A DNA stretch of 64,000 nt from Octopus bimaculoides (taxonomy: Eukaryota). Below the pieces are notes generated by a model. It was not told the DNA's origin, searched no databases, and saw nothing but the letters and a program-made list of their open reading frames with translations. Location: assembly GCF_001194135.2 (NCBI RefSeq), contig NC_068983.1, positions 37,016,807-37,080,806 of the forward strand, written 5' to 3'. A program made the translations under genes and the position numbers. Of the stretch, positions 2,140 through 60,841 are shown in pieces. Numbering within the stretch: the stretch's first letter is position 1; each line of letters opens with the position of its first letter.

Positions 2140-2344
2140 TATTGGGTTGTCCCGAAAGTTCGTGCCGATTTTTAAAGGGAAGAAAAAGGTCAATAAATAC
2201 TTGCCATTACATTTTTAATCAACCAAATGTAAACCATTTTGTTGCACAAAATACCCTCTTCTCAGAATTGAGGTGGTTTCATGGCAAATAAGTCGAAAGG
2301 TAAGCTACTATAAATCGGGCACGAACTTTCCGGACAACCCAATA
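2140..2344. mobile_element. Tc1/mariner-type MITE
   Basis: About 30-bp TIRs TTGGGTTGTCCCGAAAGTTCGTGCCGATTT / AAATCGGGCACGAACTTTCCGGACAACCCAA, flanked by TA at 2140-2141 and 2343-2344. No coding capacity. Confidence 0.85.
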
Positions 2345-2900
2345 CATTATCCAATGCATTCAGTCTTATTTACGACGATAGAGTGTAATTTGAAAGAGAG
2401 CTGGCTGCTATTTCTAGCAGGTCATGCGACCACTCAGAAACCTTCTTTAGTTCTTAACTCTTTACCAGTTCAAAGCATTTCCATAAATTTGTCCTGAACA
2501 TTAGACATTAAATCTATTATTTATGAATATTAAATCTAATATCAAACTTGGGTGGATACATTATTTGGGCGGATGAAAGAGTAATTCTGTTTTACTGTTT
2601 TAACGTGAAGACATATTCCGGGAGTTGGAATGGAACGCTGAGATTATGTTTGAAACGCTGATATTTTACTGTTTGTCTTTGGTTTTAGTTATGTATTCTT
2701 CTTATGTGGATATTTACATGAAAGAACCAGTGAACACAAGAAGCCAGTGAAAATATGTATTTGAATGTCTTAAGAAAACGCTATGATTACTAGGAAATTC
2801 CAATAATAACATTAAGAAATTGGTATACAATTTTAACCAAAAGAAAGAGAAAATGTATTTTAGAAACTGAACATTCTGAAATCGCGATATTATTTGTAAG

Positions 2901-3782
2901 ATGGTATTGTTCAAAAGTTCTTTCTTGCCGATAATCCTTTGTGCATTTGCTGCTGTAAGCTTCGGTTTCGCCAAAGTTTTAATCTTAATCTTTTCGATAC
3001 TTTTTTTGAAAGATGCCACACAGACATTTAAGAAATATTTCAAAGCAACTGAACCAGTCAGAGGCATGATACGTCATATGTTATTTAGAATTATTTGGTA
3101 TTGCCAGGCTAAGATTAACGGGGAAGTGTTCAAACACAAAGCTCTCCAATGTGCTCAGATTGAATGTTCGCCTATATTAACTATAGATAATAATCTGAGG
3201 AAGAGTGGCTTTGACGATAATATAATAGATACATACATGGACATTTTAATTAATACTTACGGTGAAGGAAATGAAAAAATGAAGTTAATACCGACCCGAA
3301 CCATAACTGATATTGCTAAAGGTAATTATTGTCCCGAATTTAATGAAAACTTAGCGATTTATAATATGCTGTTTGGTATCATCCAAATGAGACAGCATTC
3401 CGCTTTGATAGTCATCTCGATCGAAGAGAAATATATTGTTTACTTTGATCCATGTATTCACGAGATGGATAAATGCAGCAAAAGATACATCAACAAATGT
3501 TTGGAATTTTTGAAGAATGACCGTAAGTTGAAAAAAATTCATTGGAAGATTTACAAATTGGAAAATGGCCCTGAAAAGTTTTCTCGTGAAATTGAATGCG
3601 ATGTTGCTGTGATGGCTTTTGCAGAATGCTTACTACGGAACACAGGTCCTTTCATTATTAGTCCACCTTTTCTAAGAAATGAAAAAAATAAAATTCTAAA
3701 CGCTGTCTCGGCACATGTCCTCTGTGCCAATAATCAATCAGCGGAAACATATCCAAAGAGATTATCTTTTAAACTAGTGTGA
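2901..3782 (+). CDS. Divergent SENP/Ulp1-family (peptidase C48, CE clan) protease-like protein, 293 aa, hydrophobic N-terminus
   Basis: Uninterrupted 882-nt ORF with an in-frame stop upstream at 2877-2879. [13 protein letters not shown] ~ [33 protein letters not shown] ~ [33 protein letters not shown] ~ DCGMFACKYADCI. Triad H166/D183/C233 with the SENP His-Asp spacing of 17. The true 5' end is uncertain (acceptor-like sites at 2900, 3012, 3023). Confidence 0.75.
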   Translation: [293 protein letters not shown]

Positions 3783-4586
3783 AACTAGATTAAGACTTCA
3801 GCAACTGCATGTTTTATTAATTGCTAATGAGAGAAGGAAAGCATAATATTATTAACAGGTTGTGTTGTGGGGTCTTGACTCTCGCAATAATGAGTGAAAT
3901 GAATAATTGTGGAACTTTAAGAAACTTCTTTTTTCTTTAATACTTACCGAATCTGGACGAAAGGACAGTGGTCATGATTTTTGAGATCAGTGAGTTTGAT
4001 GCGTTAATGTAATGTTTGAACTTTTTTCAAGTTAATACCTGTAGGAAAGGCATAAGCAGTACTGTGGGGACGGGGAGATTCTCGAAGGCCGATGTTCTAG
4101 GGCAGTCAAACTGGTCTTAGGGGGTTTGTGTGGAATTGCACACAATAAAAATGACTGGAGATGGGGTGATGGAAGGTGGAGACGAGTAGGTCGGGGGCAC
4201 AAGAAAAGTCAGTTTGAAAGAATAGAGACCATTATAGTAATGCTAAAAAGACGGGAATGATAGTATACGAGTGGACCAGAGGCTGGAGCGAATCTGTGAG
4301 TGGTTTGACGTCACAGCAGTTAAGTGGCTCTTTTGTGGAAGCGGTTCAGAATGTCTATGTGCGTAGCAGAAACACTGTTCCTGATGTGGAAATATAATCT
4401 TAGATATGGCCCTCACTTGTATTTGGCAAGGGCCAGTAATTGTCGGGAGTTGAAGAGTTGCAGTTTAGTAAATTATAAGAATGTGAGGTGAGGAGTGAAG
4501 GTCATTTTTACTACTTTGTCCCAGGTCAGACCAATGAGCAAAGATGTTCCAACCACCTCCATCGTGTCTTTTTGTTATATCTGGGA

Positions 4587-4840: not shown

Positions 4841-6399
4841 CTCAATATGTAAGACAACTGTGTGATTTAAGGAAGACGNNNNNNNNNNTTTCTTCTGGTC
4901 GCACGGCTTTGTAAAGGCTCCTTTGTTGGTTCGTGGGAGTGTGAATGAAGTTAGTACCCATGGTAGAAGTTTCAAGTGTGAAGAAATATTCAGTTGTAAG
5001 GTTTTGAGGAAAGCAGTAATGGACAGAAGTTGAGAGGCAGGCGGCACATGTTGGTTAGAGCAATGGTTTATGTTTTTGTGCTGTTTCATAAGCGTGGTGG
5101 ATGACAGCATTTATAAAGTGACGAACAAAATGTATTGAGATATTCAGTTACATGTCTTCAATTCAGTTCTGTGCGTTTTGAGTTCACATCCTGCCGTGGA
5201 CAACTTTGATTTCATCCTTCTGGAGTTGATGCAAAAGTGTCAATCCAGAATGGTGGATTAGCGGAACAGTAAGAACGTCTGACCAGGTGCCGTGTGGTAT
5301 TTATGCGGAAGTTGGCGTCCTGAGTTCAAACCCGTCATGGCTCACCTGGAAAGTAAACCCAATCCATCTCCCTGTTTAACAACAACAGCTGGCACTTTGG
5401 ATGCATTCAGAGGAATTTACTCTGTTGCAGACATTCGGTTCAGGCTTCTGGTTTAAGGATACCATCTTCCACCAAACCCCTCTCCTAAAAGTCTCAGAGG
5501 CTGTTTAAAGGGTCATGGGTATTGTCCTTCCCGTAAATTTATAGAACACCCTTCTTGATTTCAATGGCTAGTAATTATTTTTCCTGGTTTTTTTTTTCCC
5601 CTTCAGTATCAACTAACCTAATCTCTCAACATGTCGCAAAGGACTTTTCTCCTGGAAAATGGAGGGAAGCAGCAATTACCCCTTCACGGAATTTTCTATA
5701 CCATTTTTTTCCATGTGTTATCAACGAATATGACCTCCGAATATCAGTCCTTTGTTCAGAAGTCAGATTAGTTGATAGCACACGACAAAACCGTGGAAAA
5801 ATAATTATTTCCCACTGAAATCGAGAATGGTGTTTTTTCTATAAATTAACCCCCTTTCTCTCCAAACTAAAAGATTAAAAAAGAATTAAAAAACGAAAAA
5901 GAAAATGGGATGAACATATCTATCGAGATATTTCGACATGTAGATGGGAAATATATATACTCTGACCTTGTATTTCCCAAACAGAAAAATGACCGTATTT
6001 TCTAGCAAACAAGTCTACTTAATATCTAGTGTAAACATCTTTGGTATCTTTACAAATTCTGCTGCATTTCACTTGGAAATTTTTGGTTCTCCAAATTCGT
6101 GTTAGTGTATAAGTCGACCTACCTTTTCTTTTTGGCAGTAAATTTTAGTCTGAAAAATTCGACTTGTATCCCGGAAAATACGCTATCCGATTTATGCATT
6201 TTTCTTTTTCAATGTTTTATTACTGTGTTGTGGCGCTACTATTTTTGTGTCCATTTATTTTTATACCTATCTGCTTATTTTTGTTGACACCATTGTAAGA
6301 ACGTGTATGTGCGCACGCGCGAGCGTTTTGTTGATGTGTATTTGTGGTTTGTGCGAGCGGGATTAACTTTAGTTGCAGTTAGTCTTCATTCTTATATCG

Positions 6400-9580: not shown

Positions 9581-10297
9581 ATATTTATTATGTTGAGCAT
9601 AGCAGATTTTTAACTCAGAACGTAAAGAGTTGGAAGAGTTGTCACTAAGCATTTTAGCCAGCATGCTAACATTACTGCCACCTCACCAGCTTTGCAAGGC
9701 ATACAGTAATAAGATTACATTAAGAACAGAATACTGATTGATGAAATATGATTTATTAAAATTTTTATTTAAATAAACTAGATTCCATGTACAAAGATCT
9801 TTTTTTTTTGTGTGTCTGTGTGTGTAACATGTAATCAGCTAATTTATATATTTTGAAATTTTGAAAAGTTTCTTACAAACTTTTCACTCAACTAATTAAA
9901 CACAGAAGATGCATATGAAAAATCCCAAAGTTTAAAATCACCATTCTGATATATATATATATATATATATATGCTGAACCCACTCACCAGAAGATATGCA
10001 GGTATACAGTAACTGTTGGATCATATTAATGCAATAATGTGAAAAATATGTGAAACACTCAGCAATTATCAACTGATACTAATACACAGAAACAATTGTA
10101 GCGATTTGGGTTAAAGCCTGTTCGTTTCATCTTCTTGTGTTATAATTGTTTTTGTATGAATTTTACAGATATTAACGGATTTTCACATGTGTGTTCAGTA
10201 CAAGAATTCCTGCTCTATATGATAGCATATGGTAGCCAATACCTATAGAGGAGCTTTGTAAAGTACACTATAAGGTTATTACCCAAATGATATTTTT

Positions 10298-11130: not shown

Positions 11131-13749
11131 AAAATATGATAAACATAAGATTATCTACATATAATTCACCATTGTGGCAATTTGCATCTTCTGCATGTTC
11201 CAAGTGTAATTGGATTCTGAACTACAACAGCAGAATGGCGCATATATGTGCATATACATGTACAGCGACACACATTTGATAGGCTTCTCTAGTTTCTGCC
11301 TGCCAAATTTCACTTTCAAGGCTTGGAGTAATGAAACAATATATTTCTTCCACTATACAAAAAGAGTTGTAAAACTTTGAGGATTAAGGTAGTGATATGG
11401 ATGCTCAACACTAACATGTGTGTATGTGAATGTTAAACTACAGCACTTGAAGATGACCGGAGAAGATACTGATTACAAGTGTATGGTCATGAAATTAATG
11501 CATAATATTCTAGTAATAATTCCTCTAAGAAATATAGATATGTAAATAGATTTTATATGTTGTCAACTATTTTTAGGAAGGCTCGATAGCCTTAGCTGCC
11601 ATTGTGAAAAAAAGCATTTAAAAAAATTGACAACACGTAAATCACAATAAATGGTAAGGCAATAAAAATCAGGACTTTATATAGTTTGGGGGTATAAATA
11701 ACATAAGGCAAAGTATATATATATATACTGAATTATGAAGCTAAGGGCTATTGAAAAGCTGAAAAGAGCTATCATCAATTATCAATTGTCACTGGATGTT
11801 GGTCAGTTTTACACAAGAGGGCAATGATATTGACTCTGCAAAAGAAAATCCTAACCTAATGAATTGCAAACAACCCAAATCAAAATGACTTTACATATAG
11901 AGAATTACATTCATCAAACCAATCATGCACTGACACAGTTGTTTCAAGAGGCAGCGCTGAGCTACCAAATCCCATCAGACACTGACTAATTGCACCATGT
12001 CCATCACAGCCTTGGGTCATATATATATATAAACCAGGTAGAGTTGTAATAATCAGTCACGCACACACAAACACCCAAAGCTGCTTGGACATCAGCAACA
12101 GAAACAACACAAGTTAATCCCAGATTACAGAGTTGAAGCTGGTACTGCTTGTGTTAAGATTTAGATAGTGAATGAAAGACTCAATCACAGATCAAGTTAC
12201 CTGTTCATTTATAAAAGCAGGAAGCCACACTTTGATTTTCACAATAAGTCTTGTTTTGGTTGTCCATTCTATGCAGTTTTTTACAGTGTACATTGCTTCA
12301 ACTCAAACTGAGATTGATAAACTCAGTAGACCTAATGAGATTACTAATTGAGTTCTGTCAATGTTTACACAACATTAGAGAAGCAAATAAAGCAAATATG
12401 ACAAACACCTCATCTTGTATATGAAGGCAAAATCAGAGTTGAAATCAGTAAATATTTAACTGTAGAGAAATAGTGATTGCCCTCACACTGTATCAACTAT
12501 TNNNNNNNNNNGCTACAGTAAAATATTTTAATGTTTCAAGATAATGAAAGGCTTTCCTAAGAAAGTGAACTGCAAAATGAAATATATATTTATTTATACA
12601 AAGAGAAAATAGATATTTTATGTAATACAACTAGAAATGATTTCAGTTGGTTGGTTAATTCACAAAAAAGGGGAAAAAAATTTCTAAGATATCTGTTGTT
12701 GGATATGAGATTTTTGAAAATAATTTGTTTTACTCTATCAATCTTGTTAAAAGTGGTACATTTTTGTTGAAGACTACAAACAACTGTTGCTTCATGTATC
12801 AGTAACTGGGGTGGTTTTTAAGAAATTTTTTTTTAAAGTTAATATAAAAATTAGGTCTTTTTGTAACAGTGATGTCATTAGATAGCAATATTCTCCTAAT
12901 AAAAATTAAATTATTAACCAGTAACATATTCAAAACCTCGACTAGATAATACATAGCTACAAAATTAAAATACCATACCAACATAAAATTTTACTTTATA
13001 CTTCAGTTCTATAGTACCAAGTCTAGAACTTAGAGGTTATGTTTACCAAAAATGGAATCAGTCTCAAGTATATGACAAACAGAACTCTAGATATGAAAAA
13101 ATTAATTTAGAGATAAATATCTTTGAAATAAGAATCTACACAAATATGCTGTGTAATATTTGTATAAACAGAAACAATTATATAAAAGAAACAATATTAT
13201 ATAAACAGATAATAAAAATGAAATATTTTTTGAAGAAAGTCATTTTCAAATGGTAAGATGAGATTTTAAGATAACAACTAAAGTTTTGGTTCTTGTTACT
13301 TACAAATGCAGCACCGTGTTAAACAATGTGCAAGGAGTAATTTACTATTGTTTAATGAAGAAGAAGGAAAAAACCTTCTATTACATGTGATCTCAATTTC
13401 TTGAATTACCTTGATAGAGAATTTCAAATCAAATGATTCAAGGTTAGTTGAAACAAACATTTGTATAAAAATATTTTTGTTACATCTAAGCCTTTTTTCT
13501 CTAACTGATTTTTCTTTTCATCTAATATTATCAAAACAAGTCTTTAAAAGGGGGAAAAAAAAAACTAAAATATCCAACTCAAATATATTCACAAAAAGTA
13601 GTATAAAAAATAAAATATAAAATTTATAATAACTGTACACCAGTTATAACAGGTAGTAACCTACCCACTTGTGCAGTTATTATTAACACAAATAAATTTT
13701 AAAAAGAAAGAAAAAGCCATAGCTGTCAAAGCAAACAGATATATTAAAC

Positions 13750-17529: not shown

Positions 17530-17705
17530 ATCATAATCAACATTGAATGTCCATTTTCCATGCTGGCATGGGTTGGGTGGCTTGCCAGGAAATTGGCAAG
17601 GCCAGGGGTCACACCAGGTTCCATAGTTTGTTTTGGTTTGGTTTCTATGGCTGGATGCCCTTCCTAACACCAACCACTTTATAGAGTGTACACAGGACCA
17701 TGTCA
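17530..17705 (-). mobile_element. RTE 3'-tail repeat
   Basis: TTTTCCATGCTGGCATGGGTTGG...GCTGGATGCCCTTCCTAACACCAACCAC. Confidence 0.8.
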
Positions 17706-18581
17706 TTGCAGAAGAGCAGAAATATTTAATCACATCAGAGAAATTAAAAACACAGGCAACTTTGATAAAATTAGAGCTCAGAGCATACAGAGAAGGACCT
17801 AAATATTATAAGCCATTCAATCAGCCAAACCTTTTCATAAAGCGCTTCCATACTACTCCAGATTTTGGTTTTATTGAAAGAAACATTAAGACAACAAAAT
17901 TCAAACAGAATCAGTTGATGTCTGTTCAGATATTTAAGCAATTCTGGAGTGAAATGATAATGAACACCACAAAATCAAAGACAACAATATTGGGAGTGAA
18001 GGAGTGAGTGATATACATAGAACATTAGTAAACCTAGGTTGTTCTTGCTTAGCTCCAGGTCTGACTGATTAAGAGAAACTACATCTGACAGTGTTCCAGC
18101 TATGACTACCCAATTTTTTTGAGACATAACATATCTAGGTTTGCACTGTCAAATGTGTTCTCTCTTTTTTTTAAGACAACAGAAAGATTTGGTTGCAATT
18201 CTTAGCAAGTCAAGCATCTATACAGAGCTCTCTCACTGACTCAAGATGGAAAATAAGATGCAATATTTTAGAGACTAAAGGTGAAAGCATGCACTGTTTG
18301 ACTAAATCACTGGAGTGGTGGGTAGAGAATAAAAAAGTAAAATTATATCTCCAAAAGTGAATTTTTTTTTTTTTACCAAGATTTCTTAATTTAACACAAA
18401 CATTCTCTAGTTACCACGTTGGGGCAATTTAAAAGTTAAAAGATATACTATATATTCTGGCATATGTGTTGAAATGTTCAGGCCAAAATTTACAGCCAAG
18501 ATGACTTTGGAGGACCAAAAATTCAAGTGAAATGCAGCACAACTTGGAAAGATTGTGATGATGTTAGAATGTTTACACTAC

Positions 18582-19164: not shown

Positions 19165-20660
19165 CTTTTATTTGTTTCAGTCATTTGACTGTGGCCATGC
19201 TGGAGCACTGCTTTTAGTTGAACAAATCGACCCCAGGACTTTTTCTTTGTAAGCCTAGTACTTATTCTATCGGTCTCTTTTGCCAAACCGCCAAGTTACA
19301 GGGACGTAAAAACACCAGCATTGGTTGTCAAGCGATGGTGGTGGGAAAAACACAGACACACACACACACATANNNNNNNNNNNNNNNNNNNNNNNNNNNN
19401 NNNNNNNNNNNNNNNNNNNNNNNNNNNNNNNNNNNNNNNNNNNNNNNNNNNNNNNNNNNNNNNNNNNNNNNNNNNNNNNNNNNNNNNNNNNNNNNNNNNN
19501 NNNNNNNNNNNNNNNNNNNNNNNNNNNNNNNNNNNNNNNNNNNNNNNNNNNNNNNNNNNNNNNNNNNNNNNNNNNNNNNNNNNNNNNNNNNNNNNNNNNN
19601 NNNNNNNNNNNNNNNNNNNNNNNNNNNNNNNNNNNNNNNNNNNNNNNNNNNNNNNNNNNNNNNNNNNNNNNNNNNNNNNNNNNNNNNNNNNNNNNNNNNN
19701 NNNNNNNNNNNNNNNNNNNNNNNNNNNNNNNNNNNNNNNNNNNNNNNNNNNNNNNNNNNNNNNNNNNNNNNNNNNNNNNNNNNNNNNNNNNNNNNNNNNN
19801 NNNNNNNNNNNNNNNNNNNNNNNNNNNNNNNNNNNNNNNNNNNNNNNNNNNNNNNNNNNNNNNNNNNNNNNNNNNNNNNNNNNNNNNNNNNNNNNNNNNN
19901 NNNNNNNNNNNNNNNNNNNNNNNNNNNNNNNNNNNNNNNNNNNNNNNNNNNNNNNNNNNNNNNNNNNNNNNNNNNNNNNNNNNNNNNNNNNNNNNNNNNN
20001 NNNNNNNNNNNNNNNNNNNNNNNNNNNNNNNNNNNNNNNNNNNNNNNNNNNNNNNNNNNNNNNNNNNNNNNNNNNNNNNNNNNNNNNNNNNNNNNNNNNN
20101 NNNNNNNNNNNNNNNNNNNNNNNNNNNNNNNNNNNNNNNNNNNNNNNNNNNNNNNNNNNNNNNNNNNNNNNNNNNNNNNNNNNNNNNNNNNNNNNNNNNN
20201 NNNNNNNNNNNNNNNNNNNNNNNNNNNNNNNNNNNNNNNNNNNNNNNNNNNNNNNNNNNNNNNNNNNNNNNNNNNNNNNNNNNNNNNNNNNNNNNNNNNN
20301 NNNNNNNNNNGGGTGACACGTAACGTGCGGGTGACACGTAAAAGCACCCACTACACTCTCTGAGTGGTTGGCGTTAGGAAGGGCATCCAGCTGTAGAAAC
20401 TCTGCCAAATCAGACTGGAGCCTGGTGTTGCCATCCGGTTTCACCAGTCCTCAGTCAAATCGTCCAACCCATGCTAGCATGGAAAGCGGACGTTAAACGA
20501 TGATGATGATGATGATGATGATGACAATGGGCTTTTTTCAGTTTCCGTCTACCAAATCCACTCACAAGGCTTTTGTTGGCCCAAGGCTATAGTAGAAGAC
20601 ACCTGCCCAAACTGCCACGCAGTGGGACTAAGCCCGGAACCATGTGGTTGGTAAGTTCAT
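19165..20660 (-). mobile_element. SINE family A split by a gap and an RTE-tail insertion
   Basis: 3' half at 19165-19372, N-gap 19373-20310, RTE tail (+) 20311-20522, SINE 5' half resumes 20523-20660. Confidence 0.75.
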
Positions 20661-41099: not shown

Positions 41100-41630
41100 T
41101 GAAATTCGACAACTGGCACCCATGCCAACATCGTCTCCTTCATTGGACATGAAACTCGGCTTGTGAAGACCTGTTGGGGCAAGCGAAAACAAAATCGTGA
41201 TGGATGGCACCTGTGCCCAGCGTCACCTTCCTGACACTTGTGCTGGTGGCATGTGTAAAGACATTCGAGCGAGATTGCGCCAGTGCCACTGGACTGGCTC
41301 CTGTGCAGGTGGCACGTAAAATACACCATTTTGAGCGTGGCCGTTGCCAGTACCACCTGACTGGCCTTTGTGCCGGTGGCACGTAAAAGCACCCACTACA
41401 CTCTCGAAGTGGTTGGCATTAGGAAGGGCATCCGGCTGNNNNNNNNNNGCCGGTGGCACGTAAAAGCACCCACTACACTCTCGAAGTGGTTGGCATTAGG
41501 AAGGGCATCCGGCTGTAGAAACTCTGCCAAATCAGATTGGAGCCTGGTGCAGCCATCTGGTTCACCAGTCCTCAGTCAAATTGTCCAACCCATGCTAGCA
41601 TGGAAGGTGAACGTTAAATGATGATGATGA
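41100..41630 (+). mobile_element. Long RTE 3'-tail repeat (contains a 10-N gap)
   Basis: Reverse complement of much of 50083-50600; ends in GATGATGATGA. Confidence 0.88.
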
Positions 41631-42860: not shown

Positions 42861-43744
42861 GGCATACCTACACAAGTGTGACCCCCACTGACTTTCAGAA
42901 AAATGGATATTTTTTCATCAAATTTCCTACTAATACACATCAGATGGTGTAGATTCTGATTATAACGGAATTTAAAATGGTAAAAAAAAATGNNNNNNNN
43001 NNNNNNNNNNNNNNNNNNNNNNNNNNNNNNNNNNNNNNNNNNNNNNNNNNNNNNNNNNNNNNNNNNNNNNNNNNNNNNNNNNNNNNNNNNNNNNNNNNNN
43101 NNNNNNNNNNNNNNNNNNNNNNNNNNNNNNNNNNNNNNNNNNNNNNNNNNNNNNNNNNNNNNNNNNNNNNNNNNNNNNNNNNNNNNNNNNNNNNNNNNNN
43201 NNNNNNNNNNNNNNNNNNNNNNNNNNNNNNNNNNNNNNNNNNNNNNNNNNNNNNNNNNNNNNNNNNNNNNNNAACTGTCAGATTATATCGGAATCTAATA
43301 TGGTTAAAAAAATTTTTTAAATAGTGGCTGCGCACACATACATACCAATATACATCACAAGTTTTTCAAAATTTCAGATTTCATTTTGTAGGTGTATGTG
43401 GTGTGATGTTAGTATGTACGTATGTGCGCCCACCAATTTTTTTTTTTTTTTTCCATATTAAATTCCGATATAATTGTAATCTACATATTCTGAAAAGTAT
43501 TTGTACAGAATTTCATTGGAAAATACCCAGTTTTTTAAAGTTATGAGGAAACAAAGCCGACTCGTGTGAATTATTTGAAACTCCTCTCCCCATCCTCGAA
43601 AAACTTTTTCACAGCAAATTCCAATATAATCGGTATCTTCATAATCTGAAGTGCATTTGTAGAAAATTTCGTCAAAAAAATATCATATTTCGGAAAGTTA
43701 TGAGGCTACAAAGTCGGGTGGGGGCACAAATGTGAAGGTATGCC
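42861..43744. mobile_element. Foldback-type DNA element with long modular inverted repeats (spans a 280-N gap)
   Basis: Ends GGCATACCT / AGGTATGCC. About 130 bp of imperfect terminal inversion, an inner inverted pair (43280-43345 vs 43410-43480) and direct subrepeats ending AAAGTTATGAGG (43548, 43705). Confidence 0.7.
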
Positions 43745-47501: not shown

Positions 47502-47726
47502 TTAACCCTATAGCATTTAAACCAGCCATATCCAGCCAAAATATTCTAATTGTTTTATGTTCAGGCCAGCCAGATTTGGCTTCTCATACATTACCTTACC
47601 ATGTCATTCTAAAAATACTCTATCACACCATCAAAATCTTAAAGCTATGAGATAATGAATGATAAGTTTAAAACAGTGTGAATAAGCGTTATATTTGACT
47701 GAATAATCTGAAAGCTAAAAGGTTAA
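47502..47726. mobile_element. piggyBac-like MITE
   Basis: TTAA|CCCTATAGC ... GCTAAAAGG|TTAA; a related partial copy lies at about 7520-7615(-). Confidence 0.75.
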
Positions 47727-51489: not shown

Positions 51490-54400
51490 TTCATTATCGT
51501 TATTTAATGTTTGTCCATGCTGGCATGGGTCGGATGGTTTGACTAGGGCTGGCAAGCTAGAAGGCTGCACCAGTCTGATTTGGCATGGTTTCTATGGCTG
51601 GATGTTTTTCCTAACACCAACCACTACAAGAGTGTAAAGGGTGCTTTTACATGCCACTGGCATGGGTGCCATTTGCATGACACCAGTATCTGCCATGGCT
51701 GCAATTTTACTTGGCTTGATGGGTCTTCTTCTCAAGCACAGCATAATGCCAAAGGTCTCAGTCAGTCGTCATTGTCTCCTTGTGGCCCAACACTTGTTTT
51801 TCATGTGCAACCAGCATCAGCTACCTTGCTTCTNNNNNNNNNNCAGCATAATGCCAAAGGTCTCAGTCAGTCGTCATTGTCTCCTTGTGGCCCAACACTT
51901 GTTTTTCATGTGCAACCAGCATCAGCTACCTTGCTTCTGTGAAGCTCAATGCACAAAAGGTACTTTTTACATGCCACCAGCACAGGTACCAGTTACATGA
52001 CAAAAGCATGATTTCACTGGTCTTGATGGGTCTTTTCAAGCACAGCATATTACCAAAGATATCAGTCACTATTCATTGCCTCCTTGAGGCCTAAAGTTTG
52101 ATGATCATGTTTCACTACCTAGTCCTGTGTCTTCCTAGGTCTACCTCTACCACAGTTAAAGATCGGCACCTCTTTACACAGCTGTCCTCATCCATATGCA
52201 TCACATGACCATACCAGCACAGTCGTCTCTCTTGCACACCACATTTGATGCCTCTTATACCCAACATTTCTCTCAAGATGTACATGTACACTGACATTGC
52301 ACATCCAGCAAAGCATGCTAGCTTCATTTCTTTCAAGCCTACGCATCTCCTAAGCTGTCAGCCCATGTTTCACTGTTGTGCAGCATAACTGTTTGCATAC
52401 AGGCATCATACAATCTGCCTTTCATTCTGAAGGAGAGGCTCTTTGTTGCCAGCAGAGGTAGGAACTTTCTGAACTTTGCCCAGCCTAATCTTATTCTCAC
52501 AGCTATGTTTGCGGTGCATGTAAAAGCACCCTTTACACTCTTGTAGTAGTTGGCGTTAGGAAGAGCACCCAGCTGTAGAAACCATGCCAAATCAGACTGG
52601 TGCAGCCTTCCAGCTTGCCAGCCCTGGTCAAACCATCCAATCCATACCAGCATGGACAAACATTAAATAATGATAATGAATAGATTTTAACTCTGCTACT
52701 AACTTGGTCACCTAGATAATGGAAGCTATCTACTACCTCTTGCTTACCCCACTGGCAGTTGATGGAGTCTATTTGCTGTATATTTTCGGTGTTTATTGTA
52801 CCTGTGCAGCTTCCATACACAAAATCTATTTTCCCTGTTAACCTTCTTCTGATATTGCTGCACCTCTTATATGTCCATAGCTTACACCAGGCACATCTTA
52901 CGGAGTTTCTACTTACGCCATTTCTACAGATCGAGCAGAGATATCTACCTGAAGTGATTTGTGATTTGTCTGCTTTCCTACTTACTAAGACTTACCAGAA
53001 ATATAGCATCAGTGTTGCTTCTCTCTGGCACAAAACGAAACTATATCTCATCTAGACTAACTCTCTCCCTAATTAGTTGCACTATGACCCTCTCAATAAC
53101 TTTCATCACCCGATCCAACAATTTGATACTTCTGTAATTATTTCTATCAAAGGCATCACCTTTACCTTTGTAGCAGTTGACTATGGTGCTGCTACATCAG
53201 TCATTGAGTATGACTCCTTTGTGAACAACCAGATTTACAATACGTGTGACTAGTCCATAACCCACACCGCCAGATATTTTAAGCATCTCAGCAGTGGTTC
53301 CTGATGTGTCGGAGGCTTTCCCTGTCTTCATATCCTTAATTGCTTTATTTCCCAAGATACTGTCGATTTGGATAGCTGGTCCCTCAGTTGGATCAACATT
53401 CGGCAGACTCTCCTCCTCCCATTCATTCTCTATATTCAGCAGTCTTTCATAATGGCATTTCCAAGCCTCTTTCTTTGCAGAATCATTAAATGCAATTTCT
53501 CTCTTGTGGCATCACAGTTTTCTCTTACACCCTGTCTTGCAATCTGAAACACTTCAAGTCTTTGGTCCTCATGTCGCTGAACATAGACAAACTTCTTTTC
53601 TGCTTCTCCTTTGGCTAGATATACCTGTCTTTTAGTTTCTCTCCTGATTATCTGATACACTTCCTTGCTACCCCCACTTTCCAAGGCCTGTTTCTTCACT
53701 CTAATGGCCTTGTCTACAGCATCGTTCCACCACCATGCCACCCTAGGTCTGAATGGGACTTTGCACCAGCCACTGATTTGGTCTGTGGCACTCAGCAGGC
53801 AGTCCCACAGGAATTCCCAGTTGCCCTCTATGTTACAAATCTGTAGTTCTTCCTCCCTCTCATCAAATTTCTTAATTAAGATGTCCCTAAATCTCTGACC
53901 ACATGAAAGGTCCTTAAGCATTCAAATTCTTTTCAAGATTGGTCTGCTTCTTGGCATCCTTCTGGCCTGGAGTCTAAAGTCACTAATGACTAGTCTATGC
54001 TGGGGAGGGGGGTACATTCTTCGCCAGGGAAGATCTTATTTAAGAGCCACCAAGCATCCCACTGTCTGGTGAAAATATAATAGATCTGGTTGAGTGGTAG
54101 GTTATCAGGTGGCTGGCTGGCTTCCTGAAGTTGGTGTTGCAGATCAATAGGTTATTCGCATCACAGAACTCCAGGAGCCTTGTTCCCTCTTCATGTTGGG
54201 ACCCTATTTCATGGGATACATGTACACCATGGAAGATACTGGGCTGCTACCTGACATGCTCATTGAAATCCCAGCCATGAAGAGGAGATTAATGTCACTT
54301 GTCTTTGAGGTAGCCTACAGAAGAATATCATAAAAGTGGTCCTTTTGTTCATTTGGTAGGCCCACTTGTGAGACATAGTGTAACAACAATTATCTCTGCC

Positions 54401-54750
54401 TATTTTGCAAGACTAGCCTGAACTTAAGTACTCTATCACACACTGATTACCTCTATGACTTTATCCACCAATTTCTCTGCAAGAAGTATGCCCACACCAC
54501 CTATGCTGTCACTGTTACCTTCCCAGAAGATTTTATACCTATGTGTCTTGCCTGTAAGGAACCTGGCTGAAGTTCCTCTCCAACTTACCTCTTGAATGCA
54601 ACATACATCAACATGCCTCCTTTCAAGCATCTCAACCATCTCGGTAGACCTACCTTTCAATGTGCTTACATTGACAGTGCCAACTCTGAAAACTGGAAAA
54701 GGGACAATGGAAGGAACATGGAAAGGAGAGATGATATTCAACATCTGAAA
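51490..54750 (-). mobile_element. Decayed RTE-clade LINE (APE endonuclease, internally deleted RT, 3'UTR)
   Basis: APE: VGTVNVSTLKGR..DVCCIQEV.WRG..GGVGILL (54436-54750). RT N-part GKASDTSGTTAEML..NYRSIKLL. C-part ACMQTVMLHNSETW, RRLCWYGHVMHM. Tail at 51490-51560. A second tail copy is inserted at 52510-52680(+). Confidence 0.9.
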
Positions 54751-55644
54751 AGGTTTTAACGATTGTTTGACAACAGACATATCACATCAGCTGTTCTCAC
54801 TTTAACCTACCATCATTCAAACCTGTTAAAATTGTTGCCCCTATTGGGAGTGAAAGCATTGTCAATGTTGAAATTAAGTAAATAAGCTGCTATTGGTTAG
54901 TCCATTATATAGAGAAAAAGGGTAGGTGGTTTGTTAATTTACTAAGTAACACATCTCCTTTTGGTGCATGCAGTAGTGTGGATGATTGCTGGTGATGGTA
55001 GTGGGGAGGAGGGAGTTATGCACATCTTCTGGAACAGAAGCAAGGCAGAGCCTGGTAGGGGTTTCCAGTATAAGAGATTTCTGGTACAGGTGGTGGGAGC
55101 AGGAATGAGCAGGCACAACATGGATAAGTAAAGGCCAGCTTCATCTCAGGAAATAGTAGCCAAGATAGAAAGACACTAGAGAGAGAGAGAGCGAGAGAGG
55201 GAGAGCAAGAGAGAGAGAGAGGCAGACAGACAGAAACTCAAAAGACTTTATCACTGAAGAAATCATGGCAAGTATGAGAAGACATGAGTTATAGAACAAG
55301 GAGAGAATGTTTTCAAATTTTAGAGAGAGAGAGAGGGAGAGATTGCAGGGGAAATCATGGCAAAGTATGGAAACACATGGGTTATGAAAGAGGGAGAGAA
55401 TATTGAAAAAAATTTAAAGAATTAAAGAATTATGAGTTTTGCAAGTTATTTTAAATGAAATTACAGCATGTTAGTATTATGAGTTACATGAATGAATGAA
55501 TGAAGAGTGATTAAAACTAGAGAAATACTCTTGGCTTAGTTGGTCATTTCATGTGGAATAATAGTGTTAGCAGCAGAGCAAGCAATGTGAAATTTTTTTT
55601 TTTTATTGTTTGTAAAAATTAAATAAAGGATACAAATCCTTCCT

Positions 55645-55880: not shown

Positions 55881-56924
55881 CTTGTAAAACTTGGAAACAA
55901 AAATAAAGACAAAGAGGCAACAGAAGGTTTCAACTTAATTTTATGTTTATTTTGTAATTTACATAATGATATTTAACAAAACAACTGTGAAACAAAGGAG
56001 GAAAGTGGCTTGCAGAGATGCACATTACCATACTTTATATACAACTTTTCAACCACNNNNNNNNNNNNNNNNNNNNNNNNNNNNNNNNNNNNNNNNNNNN
56101 NNNNNNNNNNNNNNNNNNNNNNNNNNNNNNNNNNNNNNNNNNNNNNNNNNNNNNNNNNNNNNNNNNNNNNNNNNNNNNNNNNNNNNNNNNNNNNNNNNNN
56201 NNNNNNNNNNNNNNNNNNNNNNNNNNNNNNNNNNNNNNNNNNNNNNNNNNNNNNNNNNNNNNNNNNNNNNNNNNNNNNNNNNNNNNNNNNNNNNNNNNNN
56301 NNNNNNNNNNNNNNNNNNNNNNNNNNNNNNNNNNNNNNNNNNNNNNNNNNNNNNNNNNNNNNNNNNNNNNNNNNNNNNNNNNNNNNNNNNNNNNNNNNNN
56401 NNNNNNNNNNNNNNNNNNNNNNNNNNNNNNNNNNNNNNNNNNNNNNNNNNNNNNNNNNNNNNNNNNNNNNNNNNNNNNNNNNNNNNNNNNNNNNNNNNNN
56501 NNNNNNNNNNNNNNNNNNNNNNNNNNNNNNNNNNNNNNNNNNNNNNNNNNNNNNNNNNNNNNNNNNNNNNNNNNNNNNNNNNNNNNNNNNNNNNNNNNNN
56601 NNNNNNNNNNNNTGTGAAAGACGAAAGAGTGCAACATTTCTGGGTAAGGAATAGAAATACAATTCTTACTCTTTATGTTTCTGTTTTAGAGTTAAATAAA
56701 TAGAACAAAGAAATGCTATTTACATAAATACTTCAATAAACTCTTATATTCAGAGACGTTGAAATTTAAAGGAATTTATTTTACAAAAGTAAGTCTTTCA
56801 TTTTATAAAAAGATTTCATACCTCATCCAAGTTTATAAATTCATAACACATATTACAGATATGTGTATGTGTATCTGCATGTGTGGGTGTGTGTGTTTAT
56901 GGAGATAAATATATATATAAGTAA

Positions 56925-59434: not shown

Positions 59435-60841
59435 TTATATAAAATCATCTTCCTCTGTCACTGTCGAAAGGAAAAGTTTATCAAAAACGTCTACATTTTG
59501 GCAATTATTTGCTGCCTTTTGTTCTAGCTGAGAAACAAATTTATCATCTGCTGATGGCATTTCTGAAGAGTTCACTATCATGGGTATAGGGTATGATGAT
59601 GACACTCGTGAATTTACAATATTGGATGGTGAAAGAAATGAATAAGATGAAGACGACGACGGCGAAGAAGCTAGTGGCATGAGAACATCTGTAGTCTCAT
59701 CACTTTGAGATTCAGAGTTATTGTCTTTGTTAGTGGTTATATTCTCAGTGGAAGAACTATTAGCATTCAAGTCATTTTGGTCCTCTGGGGACATTGTTAC
59801 ATCATCAGTCTTAGTTGGCTCAGGAGATAAAGTAACAGGTGATAATGATTCTGAGGGGGAACACACCATTTCTTGATTCTCTGTTAAACAATTTGTAGTT
59901 GAAGTAGTAGAGGTGATGCCAGCTGAGGTGGTTGCAGTTGAGGTAATGACAGTAGAGGTGGTGGTAGCAGAGGTGGTGGAAGTTGAGGCGGTAGAAGAAG
60001 TGATGGCAGTAGTAGAGGTGGGAGTAGAAGGAACAGTGTCCATTAATTTCTCACTCTCACTATAATCATACGTAGCAGCAGTAGTTTCAGCATCAAGTGA
60101 GTTAGAGTCTTCAATTTCTCCCAACAATGTTTGCAATTGTTCATGTACCATGCTTGATTGTGTCAGATTTACCATTCTTCGGTTATCTGACTCTAGAATG
60201 CTGTCCAGCTCTTTCGACGTAATATGGTAGCCCATCTTAATATTTTCATTGAAATCTGCCTTCATGAGCCAATGTGGCTGTTTTGAGGGCCGATTATCAG
60301 ACTCCCTCTTTGGTACCCGGAGTGATAATGGAACAAATAATTCAGAGAAACTATTATAATCAACTTTCTCCATCAAAGTAGGCTTACTTTCTTCTCCGCT
60401 ACCATTGTCAGATTCCTTAGAACCCGAATCTGATTCTTTTGATGCACCATCAGACTCTTTCAAAGAACTGCCAGCCTCCTCATTGCTTCGTTGGTCACTT
60501 GTAGTGAGATAACTTGAATTTTTTGAAGAACTTTCAGAATTATCATCATCATTATCACTGGATTCAGTTTTTTCAGAGTTCTGCTGTTCTTTATCTTTAC
60601 CACTCTCTGCAAAGATTTTCTTGCTTTTCTCCTCACTCTTTTCATTTGGTATGTTCTCATCTTTTACTTCTCTCGCTTGAAAGACAATTATTTCAGTTTC
60701 CTCTTCTGCACTAGCTGAGTTTGAAGATTGAGGAGAACCAGCAGCTGCTGACTCATCACATTCCTGATCTTTTTCTGACTTGTTGTCTTCATTTAATTGG
60801 GTGGAATTTTCAAAGAACACTAAAAAGTCTTCCTCTTCATT
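59435..60841 (-). CDS. Uncharacterised gene, terminal coding exon (acidic, Ser/Thr-rich, disordered; 468 aa)
   Basis: Acceptor TTTTTTTTTCAG|AAT GAA GAG in frame with the 1386-nt ORF; ends VTEEDDFI*. Confidence 0.85.
   Translation of the reverse strand, partial: NEEEDFLVFFENSTQLNEDNKSEKDQECDESAAAGSPQSSNSASAEEETEIIVFQAREVKDENIPNEKSEEKSKKIFAESGKDKEQQNSEKTESSDNDDDNSESSSKNSSYLTTSDQRSNEEAGSSLKESDGASKESDSGSKESDNGSGEESKPTLMEKVDYNSFSELFVPLSLRVPKRESDNRPSKQPHWLMKADFNENIKMGYHITSKELDSILESDNRRMVNLTQSSMVHEQLQTLLGEIEDSNSLDAETTAATYDYSESEKLMDTVPSTPTSTTAITSSTASTSTTSATTTSTVITSTATTSAGITSTTSTTNCLTENQEMVCSPSESLSPVTLSPEPTKTDDVTMSPEDQNDLNANSSSTENITTNKDNNSESQSDETTDVLMPLASSPSSSSSYSFLSPSNIVNSRVSSSYPIPMIVNSSEMPSADDKFVSQLEQKAANNCQNVDVFDKLFLSTVTEEDDFI

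What the first reader, a model, noticed from the sequence alone, without database searches (positions are those of the whole stretch)
3190..3700. SENP/Ulp1-fold protein with intact His-Asp-Cys triad but a rebuilt active site
Seen: H166, D183 and C233 align with SENP1 H533/D550/C603 (same 17-residue His-Asp spacing). Known: SENP/Ulp enzymes clamp the SUMO Gly-Gly between two Trp (WLNDE and HW motifs) and use the Gln of Q-x-N-x-x-D-C-G as the oxyanion hole. Here WLNDE is GFDDN, HW is HS, and QxNxxDCG is KFSREIECD. All specificity and oxyanion residues are replaced while the triad survives. Inference: this is either a pseudo-protease acting as a SUMO/Ub/NEDD8-conjugate binder or decoy, or a CE-clan enzyme with new chemistry. 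YopJ-type acetyltransferases are a precedent for repurposed CE folds. I do not recognise an orthologue.
Basis: partly seen in the sequence, partly recalled or inferred. Interest (0 to 1): 0.8.

Follow-up and report, generated by a model that had tools for sequence, protein, structure and literature searches.

The report
Divergent membrane-anchored Ulp1-like octopus gene
An unannotated, intron-free octopus gene encodes a membrane-anchored protein whose domain is a very divergent relative of SUMO proteases; it keeps the catalytic His-Asp-Cys under purifying selection but lacks the residues that normally grip SUMO, so what it acts on is unknown.

Summary
Window 2901..3782 (+) is a single 293-codon ORF. 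Residues 103-270 align in one piece with SENP/Ulp1 (peptidase C48, clan CE). H166, D183 and C233 fall on the catalytic His, Asp and Cys. The lid Trp, the Trp after His, the oxyanion Gln and the Gly after Cys are all replaced.

The homology is weak but consistent:
- Pfam's best hit is C48 (E=0.002), below the curated cut-off.
- A small SENP/Ulp1 HMM scores 24.4 bits; none of 5000 shuffles exceeds 9.7.
- A low-confidence AlphaFold model draws CE-clan proteases to the top of Foldseek lists, none significant.

It is a real gene, not a relic. An intact 293-aa orthologue gives dN/dS 0.16, and 0.07 in the domain, with no indels. Two more distant intron-free lineages (about 436-440 aa) keep H, D and C, with dN/dS 0.29.

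All members have a conserved N-terminal transmembrane segment. The distant lineages seem to keep the lid Trp.

There are no dispersed copies or transposon features. Function is untested. My best guess is a membrane-tethered thiol hydrolase with altered specificity; a pseudoenzyme is the main rival. It is a new variant of a known kind, of moderate interest.

The parts
2901..3782 (+). Complete single-exon coding sequence, 293 codons plus stop. The ATG has A at -3 and G at +4.
   Evidence: ORF list. An intact 293-aa orthologue, P0004, has 50 substitutions, 0 indels and dN/dS 0.16. It is the only ORF of at least 80 aa kept in the orthologous contig.
2922..3008 (+). N-terminal hydrophobic segment (residues about 8-36), predicted to be a transmembrane or signal anchor.
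   Evidence: It is the only stretch with Kyte-Doolittle 19-residue mean above 1.6 (maximum 2.44), and the same holds in P0002 and P0009. It is similar to P0002 residues 16-47 (BLASTP E=0.003; HMM i-E=3.7e-4). dN/dS for codons 1-55 is 0.18.
3207..3710 (+). Divergent Ulp1/SENP-like (peptidase C48, clan CE) domain, residues 103-270.
   Evidence: Pfam C48 E=0.0022 for residues 155-248. The SENP/Ulp1 HMM covers residues 103-245 at 24.4 bits, reached by 0 of 5000 shuffles. The order of secondary-structure elements in the AlphaFold model matches the SENP core. CE-clan proteases are enriched at the top of the Foldseek lists.
3207..3248 (+). [14 protein letters not shown], the counterpart of the SENP1 [14 protein letters not shown] lid helix. 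The lid Trp is replaced by G103 (or by F104 if the register is one residue over).
   Evidence: HMM alignment. The N-lobe alone gives shuffle P of about 0.0016. The role of Trp465 as lid is from PMC5030089.
3396..3401 (+). H166-S167: the catalytic His position, followed by Ser where CE proteases have Trp.
   Evidence: Aligned to HW of SENP/Ulp1. HS is invariant in all family members.
3447..3455 (+). D183-P184-C185: the triad Asp position, within the invariant FDPC motif.
   Evidence: Aligned to the Asp of YYDS and invariant in the family.
3576..3602 (+). KFSREIECD (residues 226-234). K226 sits at the oxyanion-Gln position, C233 at the catalytic Cys position and D234 in place of the conserved Gly.
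   Evidence: HMM and hhalign alignments. E-C-[DE] is invariant in the family. The C233 codon differs synonymously between species, TGC against TGT.

Best explanation
Window 2901..3782 (+) is a real, intron-free, lineage-restricted protein-coding gene of an Octopus genome. The protein has an N-terminal membrane anchor (residues about 8-36), a short linker, and a highly divergent Ulp1/SENP-like clan-CE domain (residues about 103-270).

Shown here:
- The ORF is kept intact and under purifying selection.
- The domain is colinear with C48 from the lid helix to the helix after the catalytic Cys.
- His, Asp and Cys are invariant in three lineages.
- The oxyanion Gln, the Trp after His and the Gly after Cys are absent in all of them.

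Inferred: the domain still works as a thiol enzyme, because a triad preserved across deep divergence is what one expects of an active enzyme. It is tethered to a membrane. In Octopus the C-terminal flank of the anchor is the more positive one, which suggests the domain faces the cytosol. Without the Trp-Trp clamp it probably does not thread a SUMO Gly-Gly tail in the canonical way. I therefore propose a changed substrate: another ubiquitin-like modifier, or a non-UBL acyl or peptide linkage at a membrane.

Sub-probabilities: real selected gene 0.9; CE/C48-derived fold 0.85; membrane anchored 0.7; catalytically active hydrolase 0.45.
For: Gene reality:
- dN/dS is 0.16 overall and 0.07 for codons 155-275. 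31 of 50 differences are at third codon positions.
- The ORF has 0 indels, against 9 gap openings in about 500 nt of flank.
- The distant lineages P0002 and P0009 give dN/dS 0.29, and 0.15 in the domain.
- The P0009 ORF is uninterrupted in a 49-kb genomic contig.

Fold:
- Pfam's top hit is C48, E=0.002.
- The SENP/Ulp1 HMM scores 24.4 bits, reached by 0 of 5000 shuffles, and both lobes are individually supported.
- hhalign puts H/H, D/D and C/C in register.
- The AlphaFold secondary-structure order is strand(His)-strand(Asp)-helix-strand-helix(Cys).
- About 20 of the top 50 Foldseek PDB hits are CE-clan proteases, and giant-virus Ulp1-like proteins appear in the BFVD list.

Triad conservation: H166, D183 and C233 are among 28 invariant columns out of about 97, so the chance that all three are invariant is about 0.02.

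Anchor.

Single copy: and one contig per sequencing run.
Against: - The Pfam score is below the gathering cut-off.
- The family profile finds no SENP among PDB sequences, and hhalign probability is only 2.8%.
- P0002 and P0005 alone give no Pfam C48 hit.
- Both AlphaFold models are low confidence (pLDDT 32 and 39), and no Foldseek PDB hit is below E=0.05.
- Loss of the oxyanion Gln and of the Gly after Cys, with acidic residues on both sides of Cys (E-C-D/E), is unusual for an active CE protease and fits a pseudoenzyme equally well.
- There is no evidence of transcription. The public short contigs end at microsatellites and look genomic.
- There is no biochemical evidence.
Confidence: 0.45

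Rival explanations
1. Pseudoenzyme: a CE-fold protein that no longer hydrolyses anything. It would act as a membrane-tethered binder, decoy or scaffold for a ubiquitin-like protein or another ligand, with the former triad retained for structural or binding reasons.
For: The oxyanion Gln, the Trp after His and the Gly after Cys are lost in all lineages, and the Cys is flanked by acidic residues. Purifying selection is equally compatible with a binding role.
Against: All three triad residues are invariant across lineages that share only about 30-38% identity in the domain. Pseudoenzymes usually lose at least one catalytic residue. The SUMO-gripping residues are also gone in Octopus, so canonical UBL binding is not obviously preserved either.
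Confidence: 0.3
2. A CE-fold enzyme with different chemistry, for example an acyl or acetyl transferase or a deacylase acting at a membrane. The precedent is the YopJ-type acetyltransferases and CE enzymes with dual deubiquitinase and acetyltransferase activity.
For: The triad is kept while the protease-specific oxyanion and Gly-Gly clamp residues are gone. The membrane anchor would place it next to lipid or lipidated substrates.
Against: There is no sequence hit to the YopJ family (C55) or any transferase family in Pfam at E up to 10. The third triad residue is Asp as in C48. There are no data on cofactor binding. This rests purely on analogy.
Confidence: 0.1
3. The C48 resemblance is a chance or convergent motif match, and the gene encodes a lineage-specific membrane protein of an unrelated fold.
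For: The match is below the Pfam gathering cut-off. hhalign probability is 2.8%. There is no PDB sequence hit with the family profile. The AlphaFold models are low confidence.
Against: The match is colinear over about 145 residues, with both lobes individually better than shuffles. C48 is the top hit among 24,736 Pfam families. CE-clan proteins are enriched at the top of two independent Foldseek libraries. The P0002 lineage also matches weakly in register.
Confidence: 0.1
4. A decaying or recently captured transposon-borne Ulp1 protease fragment that is a neutral relic. Several DNA transposon superfamilies carry C48 domains.
For: The window is repeat-rich. It has a LINE endonuclease fragment, and MITE-like inverted repeats at 2140-2344 and 5545-5834. 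Transposon-borne Ulp1 domains are known (from memory).
Against: dN/dS is 0.16 and the orthologue is intact. No second copy exists in 64 kb. No inverted terminal repeats flank the ORF and no transposase ORF is adjacent. Each sequencing run yields one contig. An exhaustive phmmer search of 1.8 billion representatives finds only two related clusters. An ancient domestication from such an element is not excluded and would be compatible with the best explanation.
Confidence: 0.05

Closest known systems
SENP1/SENP2/Ulp1 SUMO proteases (MEROPS C48, clan CE; Pfam PF02902)
   Same: The secondary-structure elements are in the same order from the lid helix to the helix after the catalytic Cys. His-Asp spacing is 17 residues. 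The hairpin motif [19 protein letters not shown] matches [19 protein letters not shown]. The helix [13 protein letters not shown] matches CGMFACKYADCIT. C48 is the best Pfam hit.
   Different: There is no lid Trp in Octopus, no Trp after His, no oxyanion Gln (K226, or Thr in relatives), and Asp/Glu instead of Gly after Cys. The score is below the Pfam cut-off. The protein has an N-terminal transmembrane anchor instead of a nuclear or nuclear-pore targeting region. It is found only in this octopus and a few relatives of unidentified source.
SENP8/NEDP1 (NEDD8-specific C48 protease)
   Same: It is a small protein that is essentially only the catalytic domain, with the same triad order. It was included in the HMM that matches the ORF.
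   Different: SENP8 keeps WLND, HW and QQ-N-x-x-DCG, and it is soluble.
Bacterial membrane-anchored CE-clan deubiquitinases of the ChlaDUB type (named only; no sequence fetched)
   Same: The architecture is an N-terminal transmembrane segment followed by a CE-clan domain. PDB entries of this type rank 1, 2, 7 and 10 in the Foldseek list.
   Different: Those hits are not significant (E at least 0.05) and come from a low-confidence model. They are bacterial effectors with demonstrated deubiquitinase or deneddylase activity. No sequence-level comparison was made here.
YopJ-type acetyltransferases (MEROPS C55, clan CE; named only)
   Same: They are the precedent for a CE fold whose triad is used for chemistry other than proteolysis.
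   Different: There is no Pfam hit to that family at E up to 10. This protein has a His-Asp-Cys triad with C48-like motifs around His and Asp. No cofactor-binding features were identified.

Membership tests
Peptidase C48 (Ulp1/SENP), Pfam PF02902 | Sequence score at or above the curated Pfam gathering cut-off (20.7 bits) | tested here: not met
   The window ORF scores 18.3 bits (E=0.0022) and P0004 scores 17.1 bits. P0002 and P0005 give no hit. C48 is nonetheless the top family.
Peptidase C48 / clan CE | Catalytic residues in the order His, Asp (or Glu/Asn), Cys, with His and Asp on adjacent strands and Cys at a helix N-terminus | tested here: met
   H166, D183 and C233 align to the SENP/Ulp1 triad and are invariant in the family. 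The secondary structure of the model places them on strand, strand end and helix start (low confidence).
Peptidase C48 / clan CE | Oxyanion-hole Gln six residues before the catalytic Cys (Q-x-N-x-x-D-C-G) | tested here: not met
   The aligned position is K226 in Octopus (with a one-residue insertion) and Thr in P0002/P0009. Gly after Cys is replaced by Asp or Glu. The role of the Gln is from PMC6759571.
Peptidase C48 (SUMO/NEDD8-specific) | Two Trp residues clamping the Gly-Gly tail (WLND lid, and HW after the catalytic His) | tested here: not met
   Octopus has GFDDN and HS. HS is invariant in all members. A lid Trp appears to survive in P0002/P0009, but on a weak alignment (1.9 bits). The role of the two Trp is from PMC5030089.
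Clan CE fold | Three-dimensional Ulp1-like two-subdomain fold | tested here: inconclusive
   AlphaFold gives pLDDT 39 and pTM 0.36 with a 6-sequence alignment. The best Foldseek E-value is 0.05, but CE-clan entries dominate the top ranks.
Peptidase C48 | SUMO, NEDD8 or ubiquitin isopeptidase or processing activity | not testable with these tools
   This needs recombinant protein and activity-based probes.
YopJ-type acetyltransferases (C55) | Sequence membership (Pfam YopJ family) and a His-Glu-Cys triad | tested here: not met
   There is no Pfam hit at E up to 10, and the third triad residue is Asp. No effector sequence was fetched for direct comparison (operator rule 6).
Transposon-borne Ulp1 domains | Multiple dispersed copies, with linkage to a transposase and terminal repeats | tested here: not met
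   The ORF is single copy in the window. No flanking inverted repeats were found and no neighbouring transposase ORF. Each run yields one contig. Whole-genome copy number was not testable.

The most novel reading that the evidence does not exclude
A gene family, so far seen only in this octopus and a few relatives of unidentified source, has repurposed the Ulp1/CE fold. It keeps the Cys-His-Asp machinery but has discarded the oxyanion Gln and the Gly-Gly clamp. It would be a membrane-tethered enzyme with a substrate or chemistry not seen in any characterised CE-clan member, for example removal or transfer of a non-UBL acyl group at a membrane.
Probability: 0.12. Interest if true: 0.75.

Novelty: new variant of a known kind. 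Interest (0 to 1): 0.45.

Why it matters
Clan CE is a well-known example of one fold serving several chemistries and substrates: SUMO, NEDD8 and ubiquitin proteases, viral maturation proteases and bacterial acetyltransferases. This animal lineage keeps the triad under clear purifying selection, yet it has lost every residue that defines SUMO/NEDD8 recognition and the oxyanion hole, and it has gained a membrane anchor. That makes it a natural experiment on what the bare CE triad can do.

It is also an example of a conserved gene that is essentially missing from annotation. The only public model is a truncated 105-aa 'hypothetical protein' in O. vulgaris, which cuts off the C-terminal end of the domain. 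The practical consequences are modest until expression and activity are shown.

Tried and rejected
Searches and models that added little:
- The word-indexed protein search with the ORF alone found nothing. With family profiles it added only P0009.
- phmmer against PDB, and the family profile against PDB sequences, gave no SENP hit.
- NCBIfam, PHROGs, PADLOC, the phage tblastn and the viral-contig scan gave nothing meaningful.
- Single-sequence AlphaFold was useless (pLDDT 32). The 6-sequence alignment improved it only to 39.
- P0003 (621 aa) is a tandem-repeat protein and a spurious hit.

Ideas rejected:
- The antisense ORF 2714..3067 is a chance ORF. It is broken by stops in the orthologous contig.
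- I asked whether the public short contigs are transcripts. Their shared ends coincide with microsatellites ((TG)n/(TA)n upstream; (TAG)n and poly-T downstream), so they are probably genomic and say nothing about expression.
- The contig L002 diverges from the window outside 2559..3934, but there are no canonical splice sites at those points on either strand. Its 3' end resembles a dispersed repeat also seen at window 47701-47725. I do not read this as an element boundary or an exon junction.
- There is no synteny or nucleotide similarity between the window and L004 outside the ORF.
- Literature searches for the run accessions and for cephalopod Ulp1 found nothing.

Full report
**What is there**

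The window is eukaryotic: 34-40% G+C, assembly gaps, and LINE and MITE debris. One close relative of the ORF's product is annotated in Octopus vulgaris, so the window comes from an Octopus genome.

The finding sits inside a single ORF, 2901..3782 on the + strand, 293 codons. The start codon has a good context (A at -3, G at +4). No second copy exists in the 64 kb by blastn or tblastn. No inverted or direct terminal repeats bracket the ORF.

**Check of the observation**

The residue numbers are correct. H166 is at 3396-3398, D183 at 3447-3449 and C233 at 3597-3599. GFDDN is residues 103-107, HS is 166-167 and KFSREIECD is 226-234.

- Pfam's best family for the ORF is Peptidase_C48 (residues 155-248 against profile positions 84-186). 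E=0.0022 and 18.3 bits, just below the 20.7-bit gathering score. The next family scores E=0.13.
- An HMM of those four aligns the ORF in one piece, residues 103-245 to HMM positions 47-194, at 24.4 bits.
- None of 5000 shuffles of the protein reached 24.4 bits (maximum 9.7). The N-lobe alone (residues 60-160) was reached by 8 of 5000 shuffles. The C-lobe alone (155-255) was reached by none.
- hhalign of the family profile against the SENP profile also puts H/H, D/D and C/C in register, but only at P=0.016 and probability 2.8%.
- The family profile finds no SENP among PDB sequences.

**Structure**

AlphaFold on the single sequence failed (pLDDT 32). With the only alignment obtainable (6 sequences, 3 lineages) it reached pLDDT 39 and pTM 0.36.

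The predicted secondary-structure order is still informative. In ORF numbering it runs: helix 104-120, strand 160-163, strand 166-173 (starts at His), strand 178-182 (ends at Asp), helix 191-206, strand 214-220, helix 230-246 (Cys near its start), helix 255-270. This matches the SENP core element by element.

Foldseek with this weak model gave no significant PDB hit (best E=0.05). However, about 20 of the top 50 out of 350,542 chains are CE-clan proteases: ChlaDUB-type, SENP1, SENP2, SENP5 and Ulp1. The viral library likewise lists giant-virus Ulp1-like proteases and an adintovirus adenain among its top hits.

Taken together, I rate a CE/C48-derived fold at about 0.85.

**Is it a gene?**

An exhaustive phmmer search of 1.84 billion representatives found only two related clusters.

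- Cluster 1 holds P0001 and P0004. P0001 is O. vulgaris CAI9720314.1, a 105-aa 'hypothetical predicted protein'. P0004 is an intact 293-aa orthologue recovered from five sequencing runs.
- The P0004 contig aligns to window 2559..3934 at 91.8% identity. Inside the ORF there are 50 substitutions and no indel. The roughly 500 nt of flank have 42 mismatches and 9 gap openings.
- Nei-Gojobori dN/dS is 0.16 overall (29 synonymous against 21 non-synonymous changes; 31 of 50 differences at third positions). It is 0.07 for codons 155-275 and 0.18 for codons 1-55. The two other frames give 0.72 and 1.67.
- The C233 codon itself differs synonymously between the two species (TGC against TGT).
- Cluster 2 (P0002, P0005-P0008; about 435 aa; seen in at least 10 runs, one contig each) and P0009 form two more lineages. 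P0009 comes from a 49-kb genomic contig. They share 38% and 31% identity with the Octopus protein over residues 160-270.
- P0009 was called with TGA read as a sense codon. In the standard code its ORF is 440 aa.
- P0002 against P0009 gives dN/dS 0.29, and 0.15 in the C-terminal domain. The ORF is uninterrupted in genomic DNA.
- The antisense ORF 2714..3067 is broken in the orthologue.

So this is a conserved, intron-free gene under purifying selection.

**What the family alignment adds**

Columns invariant in all lineages include Q162, H166, S167, K177, F182-D183-P184-C185, W215, P224, F227, E232-C233, A239-F240, E242, F251, I253 and P255. The triad therefore lies within the most conserved blocks. 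With 28 of about 97 columns invariant, the chance that all three triad positions are invariant is about 0.02.

No member has the oxyanion Gln, the Trp after His or the Gly after Cys. The Cys is always flanked by acidic residues (E-C-D/E).

The GFDDN region is not conserved between lineages. Instead, the P0002 and P0009 lineages carry RKWLMETIMFYFMTL / QRWVTETIMF about 170 residues before the His. The SENP HMM aligns this to the WLNDE lid helix, but only at 1.9 bits. Whole-protein shuffle P is about 0.001-0.03.

If that alignment is right, these relatives keep the lid Trp and carry an insertion of about 100 residues in the domain. The complete loss of the clamp would then be specific to Octopus.

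Every member has exactly one strongly hydrophobic stretch, at the N-terminus. The Kyte-Doolittle 19-residue maximum is 2.2-2.4, and no other segment exceeds 1.6. This stretch is itself recognisably conserved between Octopus and P0002 (BLASTP E=0.003; HMM i-E=3.7e-4).

The protein is therefore most likely membrane-anchored. In Octopus the flank after the segment is the more positively charged ([12 protein letters not shown]), which by the positive-inside rule suggests a cytosolic domain. That step is inference.

**Mechanism**

From established knowledge, SENP1 uses His533, Asp550 and Cys603. Trp534 floors the Gly-Gly of SUMO and Trp465 lids it (PMC5030089). [quoted passage not shown]

Here the nucleophile machinery is kept and everything else in the active-site rim is changed.

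- My best-supported reading (0.45) is a membrane-tethered thiol hydrolase whose substrate is no longer a canonical SUMO/NEDD8 Gly-Gly tail.
- The main rival (0.3) is a pseudoenzyme or binder.
- New chemistry of the YopJ kind (0.1) rests on analogy only.
- A chance resemblance (0.1) and a neutral transposon relic (0.05) are disfavoured by the data above.
- An ancient origin from a transposon-borne or viral Ulp1 domain cannot be tested here and is compatible with any of the functional readings.

**Annotation state and expression**

The exact 293-aa protein is not in the 15-billion-protein collection.

The O. vulgaris model starts at M163, follows the ORF to L245, and then jumps to a second exon at about window 5607. 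That exon lies inside a MITE-like inverted repeat (arms 5545-5592 and 5787-5834). The window has GG, not GT, at the implied donor. I regard that model as unreliable.

The public short contigs end at microsatellites and are probably genomic. Transcription is therefore unproven.

**Verdict**

This is a new, highly divergent, membrane-anchored variant of the C48/CE family, found in Octopus and a few relatives whose organisms I could not identify. It is real and under selection, but its function is unknown. Interest is moderate (0.45). It would rise sharply if activity or new chemistry were shown.

Noticed in passing
window 59435-60820 (-): A 461-aa Ser/Thr-rich ORF matches Pfam Period_C (PF12114; E=4e-6, 27.3 bits, above the 25-bit cut-off). 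It is probably the last large exon of the octopus period circadian-clock gene, about 56 kb from the finding.
   Followed up: partly
window 53436-54780 (-): ORFs of a degraded LINE-type retroelement. Residues at 54436-54780 match the Exo_endo_phos endonuclease family (E=2.8e-5).
   Followed up: partly
window 2140-2344 and 5545-5834: Two MITE-like inverted-repeat elements: 27-nt arms 96% complementary, and 48-nt arms 81% complementary. The second exon of the O. vulgaris gene model P0001 (STNLISQHVAKDF) lies inside the second element, which suggests a mis-annotation or an exonised repeat.
   Followed up: partly
window 17633-18007 (+), about 20380-20444 (-), 51580-51942 (+): The peptide-like motif WFLWLDALPNTNH recurs in chance ORFs at three places. 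It is probably copies of a dispersed SINE-like repeat.
   Followed up: no
L004 10001-11512: P0009 (503 aa) exists only if two in-frame TGA codons (codons 46 and 487) are read as sense. The metagenome gene caller evidently used a TGA=Trp code on what looks like eukaryotic host DNA. The standard-code ORF is 440 aa.
   Followed up: yes
L001 about 215-245 and L004 about 10090-10120: A block of about 29 nt just upstream of the start codon (TGTTTAAATGCTTTTTCAAATGAACGCAAT) is identical between two lineages whose coding regions are only about 75% identical. It may be a regulatory element. It is absent from the Octopus window.
   Followed up: partly
window 2714-3067 (-): A 117-aa antisense ORF overlaps the start of the gene. 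It is interrupted by stops in the orthologous contig, so it is a chance ORF.
   Followed up: yes
window 4879-4888, 12502-12511, 19373-20310, 41439-41448, 42993-43272, 51834-51843, 56057-56612: Runs of N (scaffold gaps), which produce long artefactual 'ORFs' of X in ORF lists.
   Followed up: yes
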